Shown here in pieces: positions 2,934 through 32,401 of a stretch of DNA of 64,000 bases. Position 1 is the first letter of the stretch, and every line of letters begins with the position of its first letter. A program made the position numbers and the translations under genes. Source of the DNA: Podarcis bocagei (taxonomy: Eukaryota); the NCBI GenBank assembly GCA_964188305.1, contig OZ076888.1; one strand, written 5' to 3'. The notes beneath the pieces were generated by a model. It made no database searches and was not told the origin of the DNA. It was given only the letters and a program-made list of their open reading frames with translations.

Positions 2934-3232
2934 CAGTGGTGCCCCGCAAGACGAATGTCTCGCAAGACGAAAAACTCGCTAGACGAAAGAGTTTTCTGTT
3001 TTTTGAGTCGTTCCGCAAGACGAATTTCCCTATGGGCTTGCTTCGCAAGACGAAACGTCTTGCGAATTCTTGCGAGTTTGTTTCCTTTTTCTTAAAGCCG
3101 CTAAGCTGTTAATAGCCGCTAATAGCCGCTAATAGCCGCTAAGCCGCTAATAGCCATGCTTCGCAAGACGAAAAAACCGCAAGACGAAGAGACTCGCGGA
3201 ACGGATTAATTTCGTCTTGCGAGGCACCACTG
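2934..3232. mobile_element. Young Tc1/mariner (pogo/Tigger-like) MITE
   Basis: TA flanks; 22-bp TIR CAGTGGTGCCYCGCAAGACGAA with 1 mismatch; internal GCAAGACGAA reiterations and TAATAGCCGC minirepeat; CpG-rich. Confidence 0.88.
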
Positions 3233-3666: not shown

Positions 3667-3864
3667 GTAATCCATTCTCTTTAGGTGCACTGTCAGAGTG
3701 TTCTGCAAGTAAGAGCAGCTGTTTGGTATTGAACAACTGCTGACTTGGCATGTTGAAGTTTTGAGAATAATTATTTAGCCTGTTGGTTATATTTACTGAA
3801 TTTTATGCCTAGATCATTTGCAGCTTGCCAAGGAATGTGCATGTGCCCTTCACATGTTTATATA

Positions 3865-4097
3865 CAGTGGTACCTCGGGTTACATACGTTTCAGGTTACA
3901 GACGCTTCATGTTACAGACTCCGCTAACCCAGAAATAGTGCCTCGGGTTAAGAACTTTTCTTCAGGATGAGAACAGAAATTGCGCGGTGGCAGCAGCGGG
4001 AGGCCCATTAGCTAAAATGATGCTTCAGGTTAAGAACAATTTCAGGTTAAGAACAGACCTCCAGAATAAATTAAGTTCTTAACCCGAAGTACCACTG
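3865..4097. mobile_element. Tc1/mariner MITE (CAGTGGTACCTCGGGTTA family)
   Basis: TA flanks; TIR CAGTGGTACCTCGGGTTA / TAACCCGAAGTACCACTG; near-identical copy at 33312-33550. Confidence 0.9.
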
Positions 4098-4335
4098 TAT
4101 TTGTTTCAGAAGAGCCCTAGTGCAGAAGCAGGGTAGCTATGGCAAACATAATATTTGCTGCATAAAATGTAAAGTGCTAATTTCCCAGAATGGAAGGGGA
4201 TGGGCGGAGAAATGATGCAGTATTAAACTGGATAAGGATTCCAGAAAGTTGCATGCAGCATTTAATAGGGATGGTAGAGCTGAATCATCATGGGATACTG
4301 ACCAGAGCTAGAATAGACAAACTGGTGCCCTCTAG

Positions 4336-4728
4336 ATGTTGTTGTTATTGTTGTTATTCCACCCCATACCCATGGAGCTCAGGGCAGTTCACAACATAAA
4401 ATTACAATATCAAAACCACAAAATACATAATGAAAATAAAAACAAAGACAACCCAGTAATCCCCGCCTCCCTCAGCATATTTAAAAGGGCATTGGATGTC
4501 AATCAGTCAAAGGTCTGGTTAAAGAGGGACATTTTCATCTGGCACCCAAAAGTATATAATGAAGGTGTCAACCGAACCTCCCTGGGGAGAGCATTCCACA
4601 AACGGGGAGCCACTGCAGAGAAGGCCCATTCTTGTGTTGCCATCTTCTGGCCTCTCGTGGAGGAGGCATGCGAAGAAGGGCCTCAAAGAATAATCTCAGG
4701 GTCTGAGAGGTGACCTCCCTGAGGCGCA
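4336..4728 (-). mobile_element. L2-type LINE 3' fragment
   Basis: Simple-repeat tail at the left end, then GAGAGCATTCCACAAACGGGGAGCCACTGCAGAGAAGGCCC; homologous to 20100-20380. Confidence 0.65.
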
Positions 4729-4729
4729 A

Positions 4730-5327
4730 GCATAGTCTCCCCAGATGACAAGAGCCCTGGCTGTGGTGGTCCAAAGGAAAGCAGAGCAATTCATTTGGCA
4801 CCAGATTGGCTGCAGGTGTTGCCAGAAAGAGGCCTTCAAGACATCTAGAGACTCCACTCTAGATTTGTGTAGGCCTTAGCCTTTTCTTCTCCTGAAGATG
4901 TCCCACAAGGCAGTGGGTACAGATTTTTCCTCAGGGTTTACTCCCAAAGACTTTCTTGTGAATGAGTATAGCTGCAAGGCAACAGAGATTTAGGATCAGA
5001 GTTCTCCTTCTCTTATATGGGCTACCTTCCCAGGCTGATGAGCCCCCTCTGCCCCTCATTTCCCTCCACAGCACATGCAATAACCGTCTTCTTGATAGTT
5101 GGACTCACAATGAGTCTTGTCTGTTCAATCCACCAGAATCTGTCTTCACATGCAGGGGAAGTCCTTAACTCACTGAGGGTTTGAGACCCATCAGTTACCC
5201 CCACCTGGTTTAGCTGGCCAGTCAAAGCCATTCCCAGGGTGTGGCTGCTGTTGTATGCTGACAGCTTCTAAGAGCCGTAGGTGAGAGCTGAGTGTAGCGT
5301 GGGGACCAAAGGTGGACGAATTACCCC
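4730..5327 (-). mobile_element. ORF-less RTE-related short retroposon (LINE 5' UTR derived), headed by an HDV-like ribozyme fold
   Basis: Contains TCTCCTTCTC..ATGGGCTACCTTCCCAGGCTGATGAGCCCC and GGGTTTGAGACCCATCAGTTACCC blocks that I associate with RTE-clade 5' regions; family name from memory. Confidence 0.55.
5198..5327 (-). ncRNA. Putative, probably decayed, HDV-like self-cleaving ribozyme
   Basis: Minus strand has P1 GGGGU/ACCCU, P2 CUCUCACCU/AGGUGGGGG, P3 GGC/GCC, P1.1 CU/GG, P4 UGGC/GCCA and J4/2 GCUAA in canonical order. Confidence 0.6.
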
Positions 5328-6500
5328 TCTACTCCTTTACTACAGTGATCCAAAAAGCTGGCCTTGATCCCTACTCTTCCGGCACCAAGTTGAAGAAACG
5401 TACTGGATTTGTTTTCATTACTGAGTTTCCCATTTGGAAGAGTTAAAAAAAGATGGAATATGACTTTGCTTGAAAAGAATATATCGATACTGAAAGTTAC
5501 GTCAGCATGGTTCTGATGTAAGGGAATGGATGTTTTAGTGCATTAGATCCTTACAGTATACTTAAGCAGGGCATTTGTCCACAAACATCCAGGTACAAGT
5601 GGCCGACAGAGGCAGTGCTGGACTGGCATATACAATGTCTTTCTCCTTCCTGCTAGATCATGGTGATGTCTGCTAGTAAAACTGTGTCTCTTCAGAGATT
5701 GTTTGCTGCTGGTGCTGTGTTACCAAGCCATGGCATGCTGTCTTCTGAATGTGCCCTAACTGGTTAAGCTGAGAATAACCTTTCCGCTTTCTTTGGGCTT
5801 GGATATCTCTTTCATTATCCCATGTCTGGTCTGGTGCAAATTGCCTTACAGAACTAGCATACTGAACTAGCATTCCACATTGCCTGGTTTTAATGAATGA
5901 TTGTATTGGTTTCTTGTTTGTTTGTTTTTCAAATTTTATTTTAATGTTAATATTGAGTTTCATTGATTATGTTTCTGTAAGCAGTTGTGGAATTTTATAA
6001 CAAGATGTGCAGCATATAGGTATTTTCAATAAATAAGTTTGAAGACTTGGTAGAGGATATTTCAAGTTGCAAATGAGTTTTTGAAGTATGTTCTGTTCTG
6101 CATGCATATTTGTATGCCCACAGGAGAATACACCTAAATGTTGTAAAAGGTTGTAAACAAGAAAATAAAGCAAGTTTCTCTCTGAGATCCATTATTATCT
6201 TTAGTCTCACAGCATCTGCCATGAACGTGTGAATTTATTCTGCAGTGAAGTGGGTTATCAGTTGTAACATGTTTCAGTATGTGATGCACAAATGCATAGC
6301 CATTATTAGCTTCAGAAGATTCTGCTTTTTTCCCTGATGTGAATATAGCAGGGCTATCTTTGAACATAAGAATATATTTGTCGTAAAATAGTTCCAAACT
6401 GTCTGTTGTGAAGCACAAAGATGTCTTTATGCCTCTTTGCCACTTTCCCTCCCTTTAGATGTTGATCTCTTTAACGACATTTCTCTCTTTTTGATTTCAG

Positions 6501-12137: not shown

Positions 12138-12745
12138 ATTTATTTATTCATTGAAGTATTTCTATACTGTCATATCATAAAATATCAAGGTGGTGTTCAC
12201 TGTCAAAACATCAAGTATTTTTTTTTTTAAGTACAGATAATCATTAAGGTGCCTGCCTACTTAAAAATTAAACAGCAGCAGAGGCCTTTTTGCAGAGGAA
12301 AGTTTTCAGGAGATGCCAGAAAGTAAAAAATGAGGATGCGTGCCAGATCTCTGCTGGAGAAGTATTCCATAGCACAGGACCGGTGACATGATATACCCAA
12401 CTTCTAGTTGAGACCAGTTGGGCATCTGTAGCACAGGGAGCAACTTACAGTGCTCATCTATATAATCTCAGTAATTAAGCTGATATAGAAGGATTCAGTT
12501 TGTTCTTAACATATCCTGGATCCAAATTATTCAGAGCTTTGCGTATTAGCACAAGGACCTGGCCTGGAAGCATATGACCAGCCAGTGTAGATGTTTTAGC
12601 AGAGGTGTCACATACTGTTGTCCACCTGCCCAGTTCAACAGTCTAGGCACTGCATTCTGCATCAGGACGGCCAAGGCTGATCCTGTCCCCATACCAGGCC
12701 TAAACCCAGATTGAAGTGGATTCAAATAAAGTGTCATCCAGGAAC
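12138..12745 (-). mobile_element. L2-type LINE remnant with an internal deletion
   Basis: Minus-strand translation YLNPLQSGFRPGMGTGSALAVL joined to MQNAVPRLL..YVTPLLKHLHWL, both L2 ORF2 motifs; TTTA tail near 12140. Confidence 0.75.
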
Positions 12746-20099: not shown

Positions 20100-20380
20100 A
20101 CATTATTATTATTTATAAAATTTGTATACCGCCCTTCATCTGAAGATCACAAGGTAGTCACAACATAAAAATAAAAAAGAGAATACAAAATACATAATAA
20201 ACAAAAATAGAAACAAACCAATAAACCCCCCCCGAAACACATTTAAAAGGCCATAGAATATTAATCAGTCCGAGGCCTGATTGAAGAGAAATCTTTTTGC
20301 CTGGTGCTTAAAGATATACAATGAAGGCACCAGCCGAGCTTCCTCAGGAAAAGCATTCCACAAATGGGAAGCCACCCCCA
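20100..20380 (-). mobile_element. L2-type LINE 3' end
   Basis: (ATT)n tail plus TTTGTATACCGCCCTTCATC; homologous to 4336-4728; shorter tails near 31615 and 56470. Confidence 0.65.
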
Positions 20381-22869: not shown

Positions 22870-23600
22870 TTTATTTTATTCATAGCAATTAATCTTATTA
22901 ACTTACTTTACTTTTAGACTGCCTTTCAGCCAGATGACAAGAGTTAAACAATATAAAAACGACACAAGTTAAACTGATATAAAAATAGATTTGGGGAAAA
23001 AACACAGTTCAGCAGCAAGCATAAAACATGCTTATAATCCACCTCCATATGTATGAAAAGATACACTGATGTAAAAAAAAGAAATATGAACACTGAGGGG
23101 AAATAGGTGAGAGGGAATTCTACAAACGGAAAGCCGCTACAGAGAAGTCCCAAATCTGAGTCACTTTGTATAACAGGCCATACTGGTTGACAGATCATAA
23201 GAGAAGCTGCCTGCAGATCACACTTTAAATTGGGCACAGTAGCAAGTAGACACCCAGAACAGCTCCTGGGAAGTTGGTGTTCTATGATGTTTTTTCACTG
23301 TGCTGTTCAAAACTCCCGTGGCAAGAAGAGCCCCGTGTAGAACACATTATGGTACTCTAACCAGGGTATTGGCCACTGTGGTCAGGCTATGCCAGCCTAG
23401 GAAAGACCATAGTTGGTGAACCATGCATAGCTATGGAAGCCGCTTGAGCCTTGGGTGACAAAGTTGAATTCAGGAGTAACTGGTCCTTCAGGGGGAATGC
23501 AAGACCCTACAGGTAGTTTTCTGAAATTCCCTGACATGAGAACCACCCATCAACAACACATCTGCCTTGTTGGAATTCAACATGGATGTGTTATTTAAGC
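22870..23600 (-). mobile_element. Old L2-type LINE fragment
   Basis: GAGGGAATTCTACAAACGGAAAGCCGCTACAGAGAAG matches the block in 4336-4728; boundaries approximate. Confidence 0.5.
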
Positions 23601-30458: not shown

Positions 30459-32401
30459 AAATGATATCCCAGGGCTATTGGTAGAGATGTGCCATCTTAC
30501 TCCTATGGTTACTTTCAGAGTGTAAAGATTGAGTTATGTATGTCAGGTCAATCTCGGTAATGGTTGGAGTTACCCATTTCCTCCCTTTCAGAGGCGTTAA
30601 AATGCAGTTCATATTTATAAATGGGAATTAGTTGGAGTAAAATGAGATTATAATTGTGGCAATATTAAAAACTGGTATCACGACACTTTTCTCACACACT
30701 TTTCTTCCCCTGAATGTCCACCAAAACCTGAGCTGTAGCATTTCTGATTCTATATTTGGGGTCAGCAGTTTATAGTCTGGAGTTATTGAACAGTTAAAAG
30801 TAATAGATACAATAAATTAAAATAACTAATTTTTAAGAATGTTAACTGTCACAAGCTCTTGTGACAGGAAAGGGCTATTTGTTTAATGCACACACAACTT
30901 GTGTAACATTCTGTAGTGTTCATTTTTCACTTAAATACATCAGTTAATGCTTGTCCTGAATGGTGCTAATAATGTTGAGACTTATGTGTGTTTATGTAGC
31001 TTTAATATAATATTACTGCGTTGAATGATTAGTTGTGAGGGAAATGCCCACAAATAAAACAAGCCTGTTCATTGAAAGATAGATAGGTAGATAAATAAAA
31101 AGCACACATATGACTGATTGCAATACCTGCTTAATTTTTGTCACTGAGGGATATCCAGTTGTGGCATCCCATTTGCACAAGAGATGTCCACTTGTGTAAA
31201 GGACTTATTGTTTTTTCCTTGCAGTCCTGGATGCACCCCCAAAATCTGTGGGTTGTGGGAGTGGTGCTTTGGAGCAGATGGGGGAGGGGTTCAGGAGGAT
31301 GCAGGAAGTAAGGGAGATCTTTTATTTGCCTTGTGTAGCATTGGATTTTACTCACAGCTATTATTGGGAAAGAGCTATTTATTTTTTAAAATTTTATAAC
31401 TAAACATATAAATCCATTAGGAATAATTGCTAGTTTGCATTTGGAAGATTTTGTCAGTATTAATGGCATCCTTATGGACGATACATACAGTGGAATCTGC
31501 TAACAGAATAGTGTTACCAATCAAATCTTAATTTTCAGTAATGCCATTGTAAATTAATTGACTTAGGATACCTGCAACACCTTTATTTATTGGGCAAAGG
31601 GCTGCAAAATGAATATTTATTTATTAAATTTTTATACTGCCCTTCAACCCATAGATCTTAGGGTGGGTTCACAACGTAAAAATACAAGATAAAAAACCCC
31701 ACAAAATCCACAATAAAAAATAAATGCAGTGAAAAGAGACTGTTTCAAATGCAGGCCCCACTAAAGAAGTCAAGCCCAGCAATCTTCATGGCTGCATTCT
31801 CAGGTCACACTAAGGGGGTCACCAGTGCAGTGCTCATGTGCGCAGTTGTGACCTTTGGGACTTCACCTGGTTTTCACAAAGGCTCTTGAGCCTTCCCTCC
31901 TTCATTGCTCCCTTCTTCATTAGGTGGTGAATGTGGTTACCTTCCTCCCCCTTAAAGTCAATAGAGATGGAGGAAGTTGGAAGATCTATTTCCTCTTTCA
32001 GCTCTAGGTGCTTTTCAAGGCTTGGGAGTAGCACCACAGCAGTTGAATGGAAAGCCATCTTTCAAAGGGAAGGGGGGGGGGGAAGGTGAGAGGCCTGACA
32101 AAGTGAGAAGGAGAAAATGGAGAAACTAGGAGTAGACAGGAGGGGGGAAAGTTGGGTGCCTCAGGAGTGCGAGAGATCCTTATGAAATTGCATAATTTTT
32201 TCATGGGTCCCCCAACCACCATCAGATCACATTTTTCTCTATGGACTGAACCATACAAATTATGCATCCAGTTTACTCTTTGCTGTCATGGTGCAGAAGA
32301 GTTCTTTGAACCATTGCCATGGTATACTTGATTGTGACTGTTGCATGCCAGTAAATAATTTTCATTTTTCAGAACCTACTTCTTTTTATCTCCTCGTATA
32401 G

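What the first reader, a model, noticed from the sequence alone, without database searches (positions are those of the whole stretch)
5198..5327. HDV-like self-cleaving ribozyme fold with an L3-inserted hairpin heading an ORF-less retroposon
Seen, minus strand from 5327: GGGGU [P1, G1.U wobble] - 35-nt J1/2 - CUCUCACCU [P2] AC GGC [P3] UCU UAGAA GCUGU-CAGCAUACA-ACAGC [hairpin in L3] A GCC [P3'] AC ACCCU [P1'] GG [P1.1] GAA UGGC-UUUGACUG-GCCA [P4] GCUAA [J4/2 with putative catalytic C] ACC AGGUGGGGG [P2']. All helices fall in the nested double-pseudoknot order, and G1 coincides with the apparent 5' end of the repeat. Known: HDV-like ribozymes process the 5' ends of R2, RTE and Ingi-type retrotransposons. 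Inference: a non-autonomous squamate retroposon family that uses a ribozyme, not a Pol III tRNA head, to cut itself out of host transcripts. This copy looks decayed (UCU instead of UCC, short P1) and is antisense to DOCK1, so it should not cut DOCK1 pre-mRNA.
Basis: partly seen in the sequence, partly recalled or inferred. Interest (0 to 1): 0.75.

Follow-up and report, generated by a model that had tools for sequence, protein, structure and literature searches.

The report
Unproven HDV-like ribozyme in lizard retroposon
The first 130 bases of a roughly 990-base, protein-less lizard "jumping gene" can be drawn as a hepatitis-delta-type self-cutting RNA starting at the element's first base, but I could get no second copy to test the fold, it needs a 20-base insert never reported in that RNA class, and this copy looks inactive.

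Summary
The stretch opens a ~990-bp ORF-less retroposon (5327/5324 to ~4337). This element has a 7-bp target-site duplication (TAGAGGG), an (AAC)n tail and a 3' module copied from the ORF2 C-terminus and 3'UTR of a squamate-wide LINE. That LINE looks CR1/L2/jockey-like; an RTE origin is not shown.

G1 lies within 0-3 nt of the duplication-defined 5' end. A descriptor fitted to the drawing hits nothing else in 629 kb of lizard DNA and 1 of 40,000 local shuffles at that end. A generous descriptor hits 0.3-0.5% of arbitrary 5' ends.

Against a ribozyme:
- No Rfam HDV-clan model matches, even at E<=10.
- L3 is 28 nt, not ~7-8; P1 is 5 bp; J4/2 has 3 extra nt.
- The fold is no more stable than shuffles (z +0.2), and the proposed P2 loses to a competing helix.

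No second copy of the head could be obtained, so covariation is untested. The scan already noted this motif on other DNA of this genome (s1-347491, s1-349610, s1-347499).

Verdict: the drawing and the retroposon are confirmed. The ribozyme is unproven, about one chance in three for the family, and this copy is probably inactive.

The parts
5198..5327 (-). Candidate HDV-like fold (130 nt): P1 5327-5323/5240-5236; J1/2 5322-5288; P2 5287-5279/5206-5198; P3 5276-5274/5245-5243; L3 5273-5246 with inserted hairpin 5265-5261/5251-5247; P1.1 GG 5235-5234; P4 5230-5227/5218-5215; J4/2 5214-5207 with candidate catalytic C at 5213
   Evidence: Sequence read. It is the only hit of the fitted descriptor in the window. 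There is no Rfam match.
4337..5327 (-). Whole ORF-less retroposon insertion (~990 bp); the 5' end is ambiguous between 5327 and 5324 because GGG overlaps the target-site duplication
   Evidence: Flanking 7-nt direct repeat; GC step at both borders; no ORF longer than 77 aa.
4841..5327 (-). Non-coding 'head' with no detectable homologue in the window, in 250 kb of other lizard loci or in the protein collections; its 3' limit is approximate
   Evidence: blastn/nhmmer. Local alignment was no better than shuffles. The protein profile was negative. The 69-aa ORF found nothing. The CM search found nothing.
4359..4840 (-). 3' module derived from the C-terminal coding end and 3'UTR of a squamate LINE (APE endonuclease + RVT_1 ORF2). 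Robust homology runs from ~4770-4840 downward. The remnant peptide '...AFSAVAPRLWNALPREVRLTPSLYTF...' lies at 4682-4506.
   Evidence: phmmer hits to the C-termini of RVT_1 proteins of Varanus and Anolis; nhmmer to LINE copies in Varanus, Elgaria, Rhineura and Hemicordylus; tblastn.
4337..4358 (-). Microsatellite-like tail (AAC/AAT)n ending the element
   Evidence: Tandem Repeats Finder; sequence.
5325..5331 (-). 5' copy of the putative target-site duplication TAGAGGG (overlaps G1-G3 of the proposed P1)
4328..4334 (-). 3' copy of the putative target-site duplication TAGAGGG

Best explanation
What is certainly here is one old copy of a non-autonomous, ORF-less retroposon of about 990 bp on the minus strand. 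Its last ~430-500 bp are the C-terminal coding end and 3'UTR of a squamate LINE. That is the part a LINE reverse transcriptase recognises, so the element was most likely copied in trans by target-primed reverse transcription. That process left an (AAC)n tail and a 7-bp target-site duplication. The duplication, tail and LINE homology are shown; mobilisation in trans is inferred.

Its first 130 nt can be drawn as an HDV-like double pseudoknot that would cleave at the element's first base. I judge it more likely than not that this drawing is not a working ribozyme. In this copy it is either a fortuitous arrangement of short helices in a GC-rich non-coding head, or at best the decayed relic of one. 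On that reading the 5' end reflects transcription start or full-length reverse transcription rather than self-cleavage.
For: Retroposon anatomy:
- Target-site duplication, tail, LINE 3' module.
- No ORF and no RT or EN remnant in the head.

Against a working ribozyme:
- No HDV-clan Rfam hit at gathering score, nor at E<=10, even on 181 nt with the laxest filters.
- L3 is 28 nt. By contrast, P3+L3+P1.1 form a compact 15-nt conserved core in R2 ribozymes (PMC3774820).
- P1 has only 5 pairs, against the usual 6-7.
- P1.1 is C-G plus U-G.
- Three extra nt lie between C-U-A-A and P2'.
- The MFE is -38.1 kcal/mol, z +0.21 against shuffles.
- The proposed P2 has ~6% ensemble probability and sits 3.9 kcal/mol above a fold that uses the competing helix CCCCAC/GUGGGG.
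- A generous descriptor matches 0.3-0.5% of arbitrary 5' ends. A flexible reader looking at hundreds of repeat families should therefore meet such a drawing by chance.
Against: - The fitted descriptor is rare: 0.07 hits per shuffled window, 1 in 40,000 at the 5' end with local composition, and no other hit in 629 kb of real lizard DNA.
- The core letters beyond the helices also fit: L3 U at position 1 and G at position 6, GG after P1', and C-N-A-A in J4/2.
- The two unpaired bases between P3' and P1' keep the 7-nt P1 register.
- The start coincides with the duplication-defined 5' end.
- Earlier notes of this scan say the same motif heads other copies in this genome, and one follow-up judged it rarer than chance (s1-347491). 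I could not check those copies myself.
Confidence: 0.55

Rival explanations
1. The family head is, or ancestrally was, a genuine HDV-like self-cleaving ribozyme of a new structural variant. It carries a hairpin inserted at the 3' side of L3 and a lengthened J4/2. It frees the retroposon RNA at G1 from read-through host transcripts. This copy is a decayed member: UCU for UCC, and a 5-bp P1.
For: - All helices are in the right order, with the G1-U wobble, L3 U at position 1 and G at position 6, GG, and C-U-A-A.
- It is the only hit of the fitted descriptor in 629 kb, against a chance of 2.5e-5 at a given 5' end.
- G1 lies 0-3 nt from the duplication-defined 5' end.
- The element has no tRNA, 5S or 7SL head, so it needs some other way to define its 5' end.
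- There are precedents. HDV-like ribozymes sit at the 5' ends of R2 and other LINEs (PMC3774820, PMC7761336) and of the non-autonomous NARTc (PMC3383444).
- Long J1/2 loops and short P1 stems are tolerated.
- Earlier scan notes report the same motif at the exact 5' end of other copies (s1-347491, s1-349610, s1-347499).
Against: - No covariance-model support.
- I know of no described member with an insertion in L3. The prior follow-up (s1-347491) knew of none either, and the R2 survey in PMC3774820 shows a compact core.
- Thermodynamics do not favour P2.
- There is no covariation or RNA-end evidence.
- The young Varanus relatives of the partner LINE start with GC-rich tandem monomers and show no HDV-like hit. 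The head was therefore not simply inherited from that LINE.
Confidence: 0.33
2. The 5327-4841 head is not part of a repeat family at all. It would be unique intronic or transduced sequence joined to a 5'-truncated LINE 3' end, so the '5' end' is an accident of this locus.
For: No second copy of the head exists in the window or in any fetched locus.
Against: - The 7-nt duplication brackets the whole 990 bp.
- GC content is uniform across the head and tail and differs from the flanks.
- Earlier scan notes describe the same head on other pieces of this genome.
Confidence: 0.07

Closest known systems
[quoted passage not shown]
   Same: Position at the element's first base. The order P1-P2-P3-P3'-P1'-P4-P4'-P2'. 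The G-U wobble at the cleavage site. A 3-bp P3. L3 beginning U-C with a G five positions on. GG for P1.1. C-N-A-A in J4/2. A long J1/2, which is tolerated (PMC3774820).
   Different: L3 is 28 nt with an internal 5-bp hairpin, instead of ~7-8 nt. P1 is 5 bp. P1.1 is weakened (C-G, U-G). Three extra nt lie before P2'. No Rfam model match. No cleavage or covariation data.
NARTc / L1Tc Pr77-L1TcRz of Trypanosoma cruzi (PMC3383444, PMC3185411)
   Same: A non-autonomous, ORF-less partner of a LINE that carries an HDV-like ribozyme in its first nucleotides.
   Different: A trypanosomatid ingi-clade element whose 77-nt ribozyme is shared with its autonomous partner and is active in vitro. Here the host is a lizard, the tail is from a CR1/L2/jockey-like LINE, and the head has no detectable counterpart in the LINE copies I could fetch.
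LINE-tailed non-autonomous retroposons / SINE-like elements of squamates that borrow a LINE 3' end
   Same: The 3' ~430-500 bp are homologous to a LINE ORF2 C-terminus and 3'UTR. There is a microsatellite tail and a target-site duplication. There is no coding capacity.
   Different: No Pol III (tRNA/5S/7SL) head. The ~490-nt head is of unknown origin.

Membership tests
HDV-like self-cleaving ribozymes | Nested double pseudoknot with strands in the order P1, P2, P3, P3', P1', P4, P4', P2' | tested here: met
   All pairings were verified on the sequence and recovered by script. This shows only that the drawing is possible, not that the RNA folds this way.
HDV-like self-cleaving ribozymes | P1 of ~6-7 bp beginning with a G-U wobble at the cleavage site | tested here: inconclusive
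   The G1-U wobble is present, but only 5 pairs form and the top two positions are mismatched (GGGGUAA vs ACACCCU). R2 ribozymes are typically 6-7 bp, and one active example has 4.
HDV-like self-cleaving ribozymes | Compact active-site core: 3-bp P3, short L3 (~7-8 nt) and 2-bp P1.1 (15 nt in R2) | tested here: not met
   P3 is 3 bp, but L3 is 28 nt with a 5-bp hairpin, and P1.1 would be C-G plus U-G (core size from PMC3774820).
HDV-like self-cleaving ribozymes | Conserved L3 U...G reverse wobble, and a catalytic C in J4/2 followed by purine-A abutting P2 | tested here: inconclusive
   L3 starts UCUUAG, with U at position 1 and G at position 6. J4/2 holds C5213-U-A-A, but ACC intervenes before P2'. 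Conservation of the G is from PMC3774820.
HDV-like self-cleaving ribozymes | Recognised by a curated covariance model of the clade (Rfam) | tested here: not met
   No hit at gathering score, nor at E<=10 on 1301 nt or on 181 nt. The large insertions would depress any CM score, so this is weak negative evidence.
HDV-like self-cleaving ribozymes | Helices supported by covariation across family members | not testable with these tools
   No second copy of the head turned up in the window, in 250 kb of other lizard loci, in the collection scans or in the protein look-ups.
HDV-like self-cleaving ribozymes | [quoted passage not shown] | not testable with these tools
   This is a bench assay.
Non-autonomous LINE-mobilised retroposon | 3' end homologous to the 3' end of an autonomous LINE | tested here: met
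   A 59-aa remnant hits the C-termini of RVT_1 proteins. DNA homology to LINE copies of four lizard genera runs from ~4840-4770 to 4340.
Non-autonomous LINE-mobilised retroposon | Target-site duplication and a simple-repeat or A-rich tail | tested here: met
   TAGAGGG at both ends; an (AAC)n-type tail at 4337-4358.
Non-autonomous LINE-mobilised retroposon | No reverse transcriptase or endonuclease coding capacity | tested here: met
   The longest ORF is 77 aa. tblastn and the protein profile find only the C-terminal tail remnant.
RTE-clade dependent element (as an earlier scan note called the family) | 3' module derived from an RTE-clade LINE | tested here: inconclusive
   Relatives of the partner LINE carry PF14529/PF03372 endonuclease plus RVT_1, and their sources name them jockey- or BS-like. 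Their endonuclease motif 'GPTHxxGHTLDL' is, from my own knowledge, typical of CR1/L2, not RTE. No phylogeny was run.

The most novel reading that the evidence does not exclude
A vertebrate (squamate) family of ORF-less retroposons with a CR1/L2-type tail carries a new structural variant of the HDV-like ribozyme. The variant tolerates a ~20-nt hairpin inserted in the catalytic L3 loop, and the family uses it to cut its RNA out of host read-through transcripts at the exact 5' end.
Probability: 0.3. Interest if true: 0.7.

Novelty: new member of a known kind. Interest (0 to 1): 0.4.

Why it matters
If the fold is real, three things would follow. The HDV-like active site could accommodate a sizeable insertion in L3, which changes the search descriptors used to find these ribozymes. 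Ribozyme-based 5' processing would extend to a vertebrate non-autonomous retroposon with a CR1/L2-type tail. And it would explain how a promoter-less, ORF-less element gets a defined 5' end. If it is not real, this is an ordinary decayed LINE-tailed retroposon in an intron, and a useful warning that loose HDV-like drawings arise at roughly 0.3-0.5% of arbitrary sequence starts.

Tried and rejected
1. Rfam: whole window at gathering score, and E<=10 on 1.3 kb and on 181 nt. The only hits were noise (snoRNA-like, Gl_U4, PCA3), with no ribozyme family. Rfam on the Varanus and ENA loci L002-L004 found nothing.
2. Other copies of the head in the window: blastn and nhmmer found none. Only the LINE 3' module recurs.
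3. Collection scans with a 23-base P1'-P4-J4/2 pattern: viral 0 and genomes 0. Metagenomes gave 1 hit, a chance match inside a bacterial coding contig (L001).
4. Reaching other copies through called ORFs: the 69-aa head ORF has no homologue. Eight window ORFs are not in the protein collection.
5. Fetching lizard DNA through LINE-derived proteins (Varanus, Elgaria, Rhineura, Hemicordylus and an ENA contig). None is from the window's species. None holds the head by nhmmer, by my descriptors or by a single-sequence covariance model.
6. Testing whether the head is diverged LINE coding sequence: local alignments were no better than shuffles and the protein profile was negative. The only hint is a weak colinear match to a Rhineura copy reaching ~5040. 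I rejected it as unproven.
7. A tRNA, 5S or 7SL head: none found.
8. Literature: nothing on HDV-like ribozymes in lizards or Anolis, and no paper prints these sequence strings. The JBC 2011 paper on LINE ribozymes is not held.
9. PDB comparison of the LINE RT did not resolve its clade.
10. The orientation relative to DOCK1 was not checked.

Full report
OBSERVATION.
- P1: GGGGU (5327-5323) pairs with ACCCU (5240-5236), starting with a G-U wobble.
- J1/2: 35 nt.
- P2: CUCUCACCU (5287-5279) pairs with AGGUGGGGG (5206-5198), 9 bp including 2 G-U.
- P3: GGC/GCC (5276-5274 / 5245-5243).
- L3: 28 nt, beginning UCUUAGAA and holding the 5-bp hairpin GCUGU/ACAGC.
- After P1': GG, then GAA.
- P4: UGGC/GCCA with an 8-nt loop.
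- J4/2: GCUAA, then ACC, then P2'.
The strands follow the HDV order.

- The 'AC' between P3' and P1' keeps a 7-nt P1' register, so P1 can be read as a 7-position stem whose top two positions are mismatched. Such mismatches occur in about a quarter of R2 ribozymes (PMC3774820).
- L3 has U at position 1 and G at position 6. That is the spacing of the conserved U-G reverse wobble (conservation of the G: PMC3774820; the HDV numbering is from my own knowledge).

WHAT THE STRETCH BELONGS TO. The 130 nt open a ~990-bp insertion.
- A 7-nt direct repeat, TAGAGGG, lies at 5331-5325 and again at 4334-4328, just after a short (AAC/AAT)n tail at 4337-4358. Random window pieces share a 7-mer with comparable adjacency in 19 of 5000 trials.
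- GC content is 0.45-0.56 inside the insertion and ~0.37-0.43 outside.
- The GGG of P1 overlaps the repeat, so the element's first base lies somewhere in 5327-5324. That overlap is what microhomology-mediated 5' joining would leave. It is compatible with G1 being the first base but does not prove it.

The last part of the element is LINE-derived.
- A 59-aa remnant (4682-4506, '...AFSAVAPRLWNALPREVRLTPSLYTF...') hits the extreme C-termini of RVT_1-containing proteins of Varanus komodoensis and Anolis sagrei.
- At the DNA level, LINE copies fetched from Varanus, Elgaria, Rhineura and Hemicordylus align from about 4840-4770 down to 4340.
- That LINE family is squamate-wide (also Podarcis, Anolis carolinensis, Salvator, Erythrolamprus).
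- It encodes an APE-type endonuclease (PF14529/PF03372) plus RVT_1, and source databases name it jockey- or BS-like.
- Its endonuclease motif 'GPTHxxGHTLDL' is, from my own knowledge, CR1/L2-like rather than RTE-like. No phylogeny was run, so an RTE origin is not shown.

Upstream of ~4840 I found no homology to anything.
- Local alignments to LINE bodies score no better than shuffles.
- A protein profile of the LINE C-terminal 330 aa finds nothing there.
- tblastn finds nothing.
- There is no tRNA, 5S or 7SL head.
- No ORF exceeds 77 aa.
So the element is a non-coding ~490-nt head fused to a LINE 3' module. This is a non-autonomous retroposon, presumably copied in trans by the LINE's reverse transcriptase (inferred).

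IS THE FOLD MORE THAN CHANCE?
- I wrote a descriptor whose limits just include the drawing: P1 >=5 bp with G-U first, J1/2 <=40 nt, P2 >=6 bp, 3-bp P3, L3 6-30 nt starting UC[CU], GG, P4 >=4 bp, and C-N-R-A plus 0-3 nt.
  - It finds only this site in the window and none in 250 kb of other lizard loci.
  - In 200 dinucleotide shuffles of the window, the mean was 0.07 hits, and 11 shuffles had at least one.
  - In 40,000 shuffles of the first 188 nt at local composition, 3 had any hit and 1 had a hit within +-3 nt of the 5' end.
- That descriptor is post hoc. A deliberately generous one (P1 >=4, P2 >=5, L3 <=40 with a free third base, longer joiners) matches far more often.
  - It hits 41 of 8000 local shuffles at the 5' end.
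  - It hits 244 start sites in 629 kb of real DNA, 3.9e-4 per position.
- The true chance for a given repeat 5' end therefore lies between about 2.5e-5 and 5e-3. A flexible reader inspects hundreds of repeat families. At family level, the expected number of chance matches runs from about 0.01 to above 1. That is suggestive, not decisive.
- A strict canonical descriptor (L3 <=10, P1 >=6, no extra joiners) finds nothing.

INDEPENDENT STRUCTURAL SUPPORT IS ABSENT.
- No HDV-clan Rfam model matches at gathering score or at E<=10, even when only 181 nt are searched. The large insertions would depress any score, so this is weak evidence.
- The 130-mer folds to -38.1 kcal/mol, z = +0.21 against shuffles.
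- In the nested ensemble, P4 (~0.87), P3 and the L3 hairpin (~0.62) form readily.
It lies 3.9 kcal/mol above a fold using the competing helix CCCCAC (inside J1/2) with GUGGGG.

The deviations from the class are also substantial.
- L3 is 28 nt, whereas P3+L3+P1.1 form a compact 15-nt core in R2 ribozymes.
- Three nt (ACC) lie between C-U-A-A and P2'.
- P1.1 would be C-G plus U-G.
- P1 has 5 pairs.
A long J1/2 is not a problem; R2 ribozymes have 23 to more than 700 nt between P1 and P1'.

THE DECISIVE TEST COULD NOT BE RUN. Covariation needs other copies of the head, and I could not obtain any.
- The window has none.
- Scans of the viral and prokaryotic collections gave nothing. The metagenome scan gave one chance hit in a bacterial contig.
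- The head's ORFs are not in the protein collections.
- None of the lizard loci reachable through LINE-derived proteins is from the window's species or contains the head.
- The young Varanus relatives of the partner LINE begin with GC-rich tandem monomers and give no HDV-like hit. The head was therefore not simply inherited from that LINE's 5' end.

EARLIER NOTES OF THIS SCAN.
- One follow-up (s1-347491) concluded the match was rarer than chance, needed a ~20-nt L3 insert unknown in described members, and lacked covariation or RNA-end evidence. My independent statistics and caveats on this copy agree.
- That follow-up described a 694-bp element and called it an RTE family. This copy is ~990 bp with a CR1/L2/jockey-like tail. 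I cannot reconcile the two without their sequences.
- These notes are not independent evidence for the structure. They do suggest that the head is a repeated family feature rather than unique sequence.

COMPARISON WITH WHAT IS KNOWN.
- HDV-like ribozymes at retrotransposon 5' ends are established for R2 (PMC3774820) and other LINEs (PMC7761336).
- They are also established for L1Tc together with its non-autonomous partner NARTc (PMC3383444, PMC3185411). A ribozyme-headed ORF-less retroposon is therefore not a new concept.
- What would be new is the vertebrate host, the CR1/L2-type tail and, above all, the L3 insertion.

VERDICT.
- I put about 0.55 on the fold being a non-functional resemblance, or at most a dead relic, in an ordinary LINE-tailed retroposon.
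- I put about 0.33 on a genuine, ancestrally active HDV-like variant at family level.
- The small remainder goes to the head being non-repeat sequence.
- This particular copy is probably inactive either way.

No contig looked human, and no N stretch was filled.

Noticed in passing
window 3862-4100: MITE-like unit bounded by 21-nt terminal inverted repeats ATACAGTGGTACCTCGGGTTA / TAACCCGAAGTACCACTGTAT (95% complementary), with internal partial copies of the same arm.
   Followed up: partly
window 2956-3226: Cluster of 17-nt inverted repeats (TGCTTCGCAAGACGAAA / TTTCGTCTTGCGAGGCA) around a short AGCGGCTATT tandem. It looks like another small hairpin-forming DNA-transposon-type repeat.
   Followed up: no
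window 20106-20380, 31631-31728, 12279-12413 (coding remnant to ~12640), 23110-23165: Four further decayed copies of the same LINE 3' module on the minus strand. None of them has the head.
   Followed up: partly
L005:9500-9900 and L006:9700-9900 (Varanus komodoensis): The young Varanus LINE related to the tail donor has a GC-rich 5' region made of ~100-nt tandem monomers, resembling monomeric LINE promoters. It gave no HDV-like hit with my descriptors.
   Followed up: partly
L006:16448-17095 (Varanus komodoensis): A short LINE-tailed element whose weak similarity to the window element reaches upstream to about window 4987, further than the autonomous LINE copies do. It may be a distant non-autonomous relative.
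   Followed up: partly
L001:9215-9249: The only metagenome match to the 23-base pattern lies inside a bacterial-looking coding region. It is a chance hit, not a relative.
   Followed up: yes
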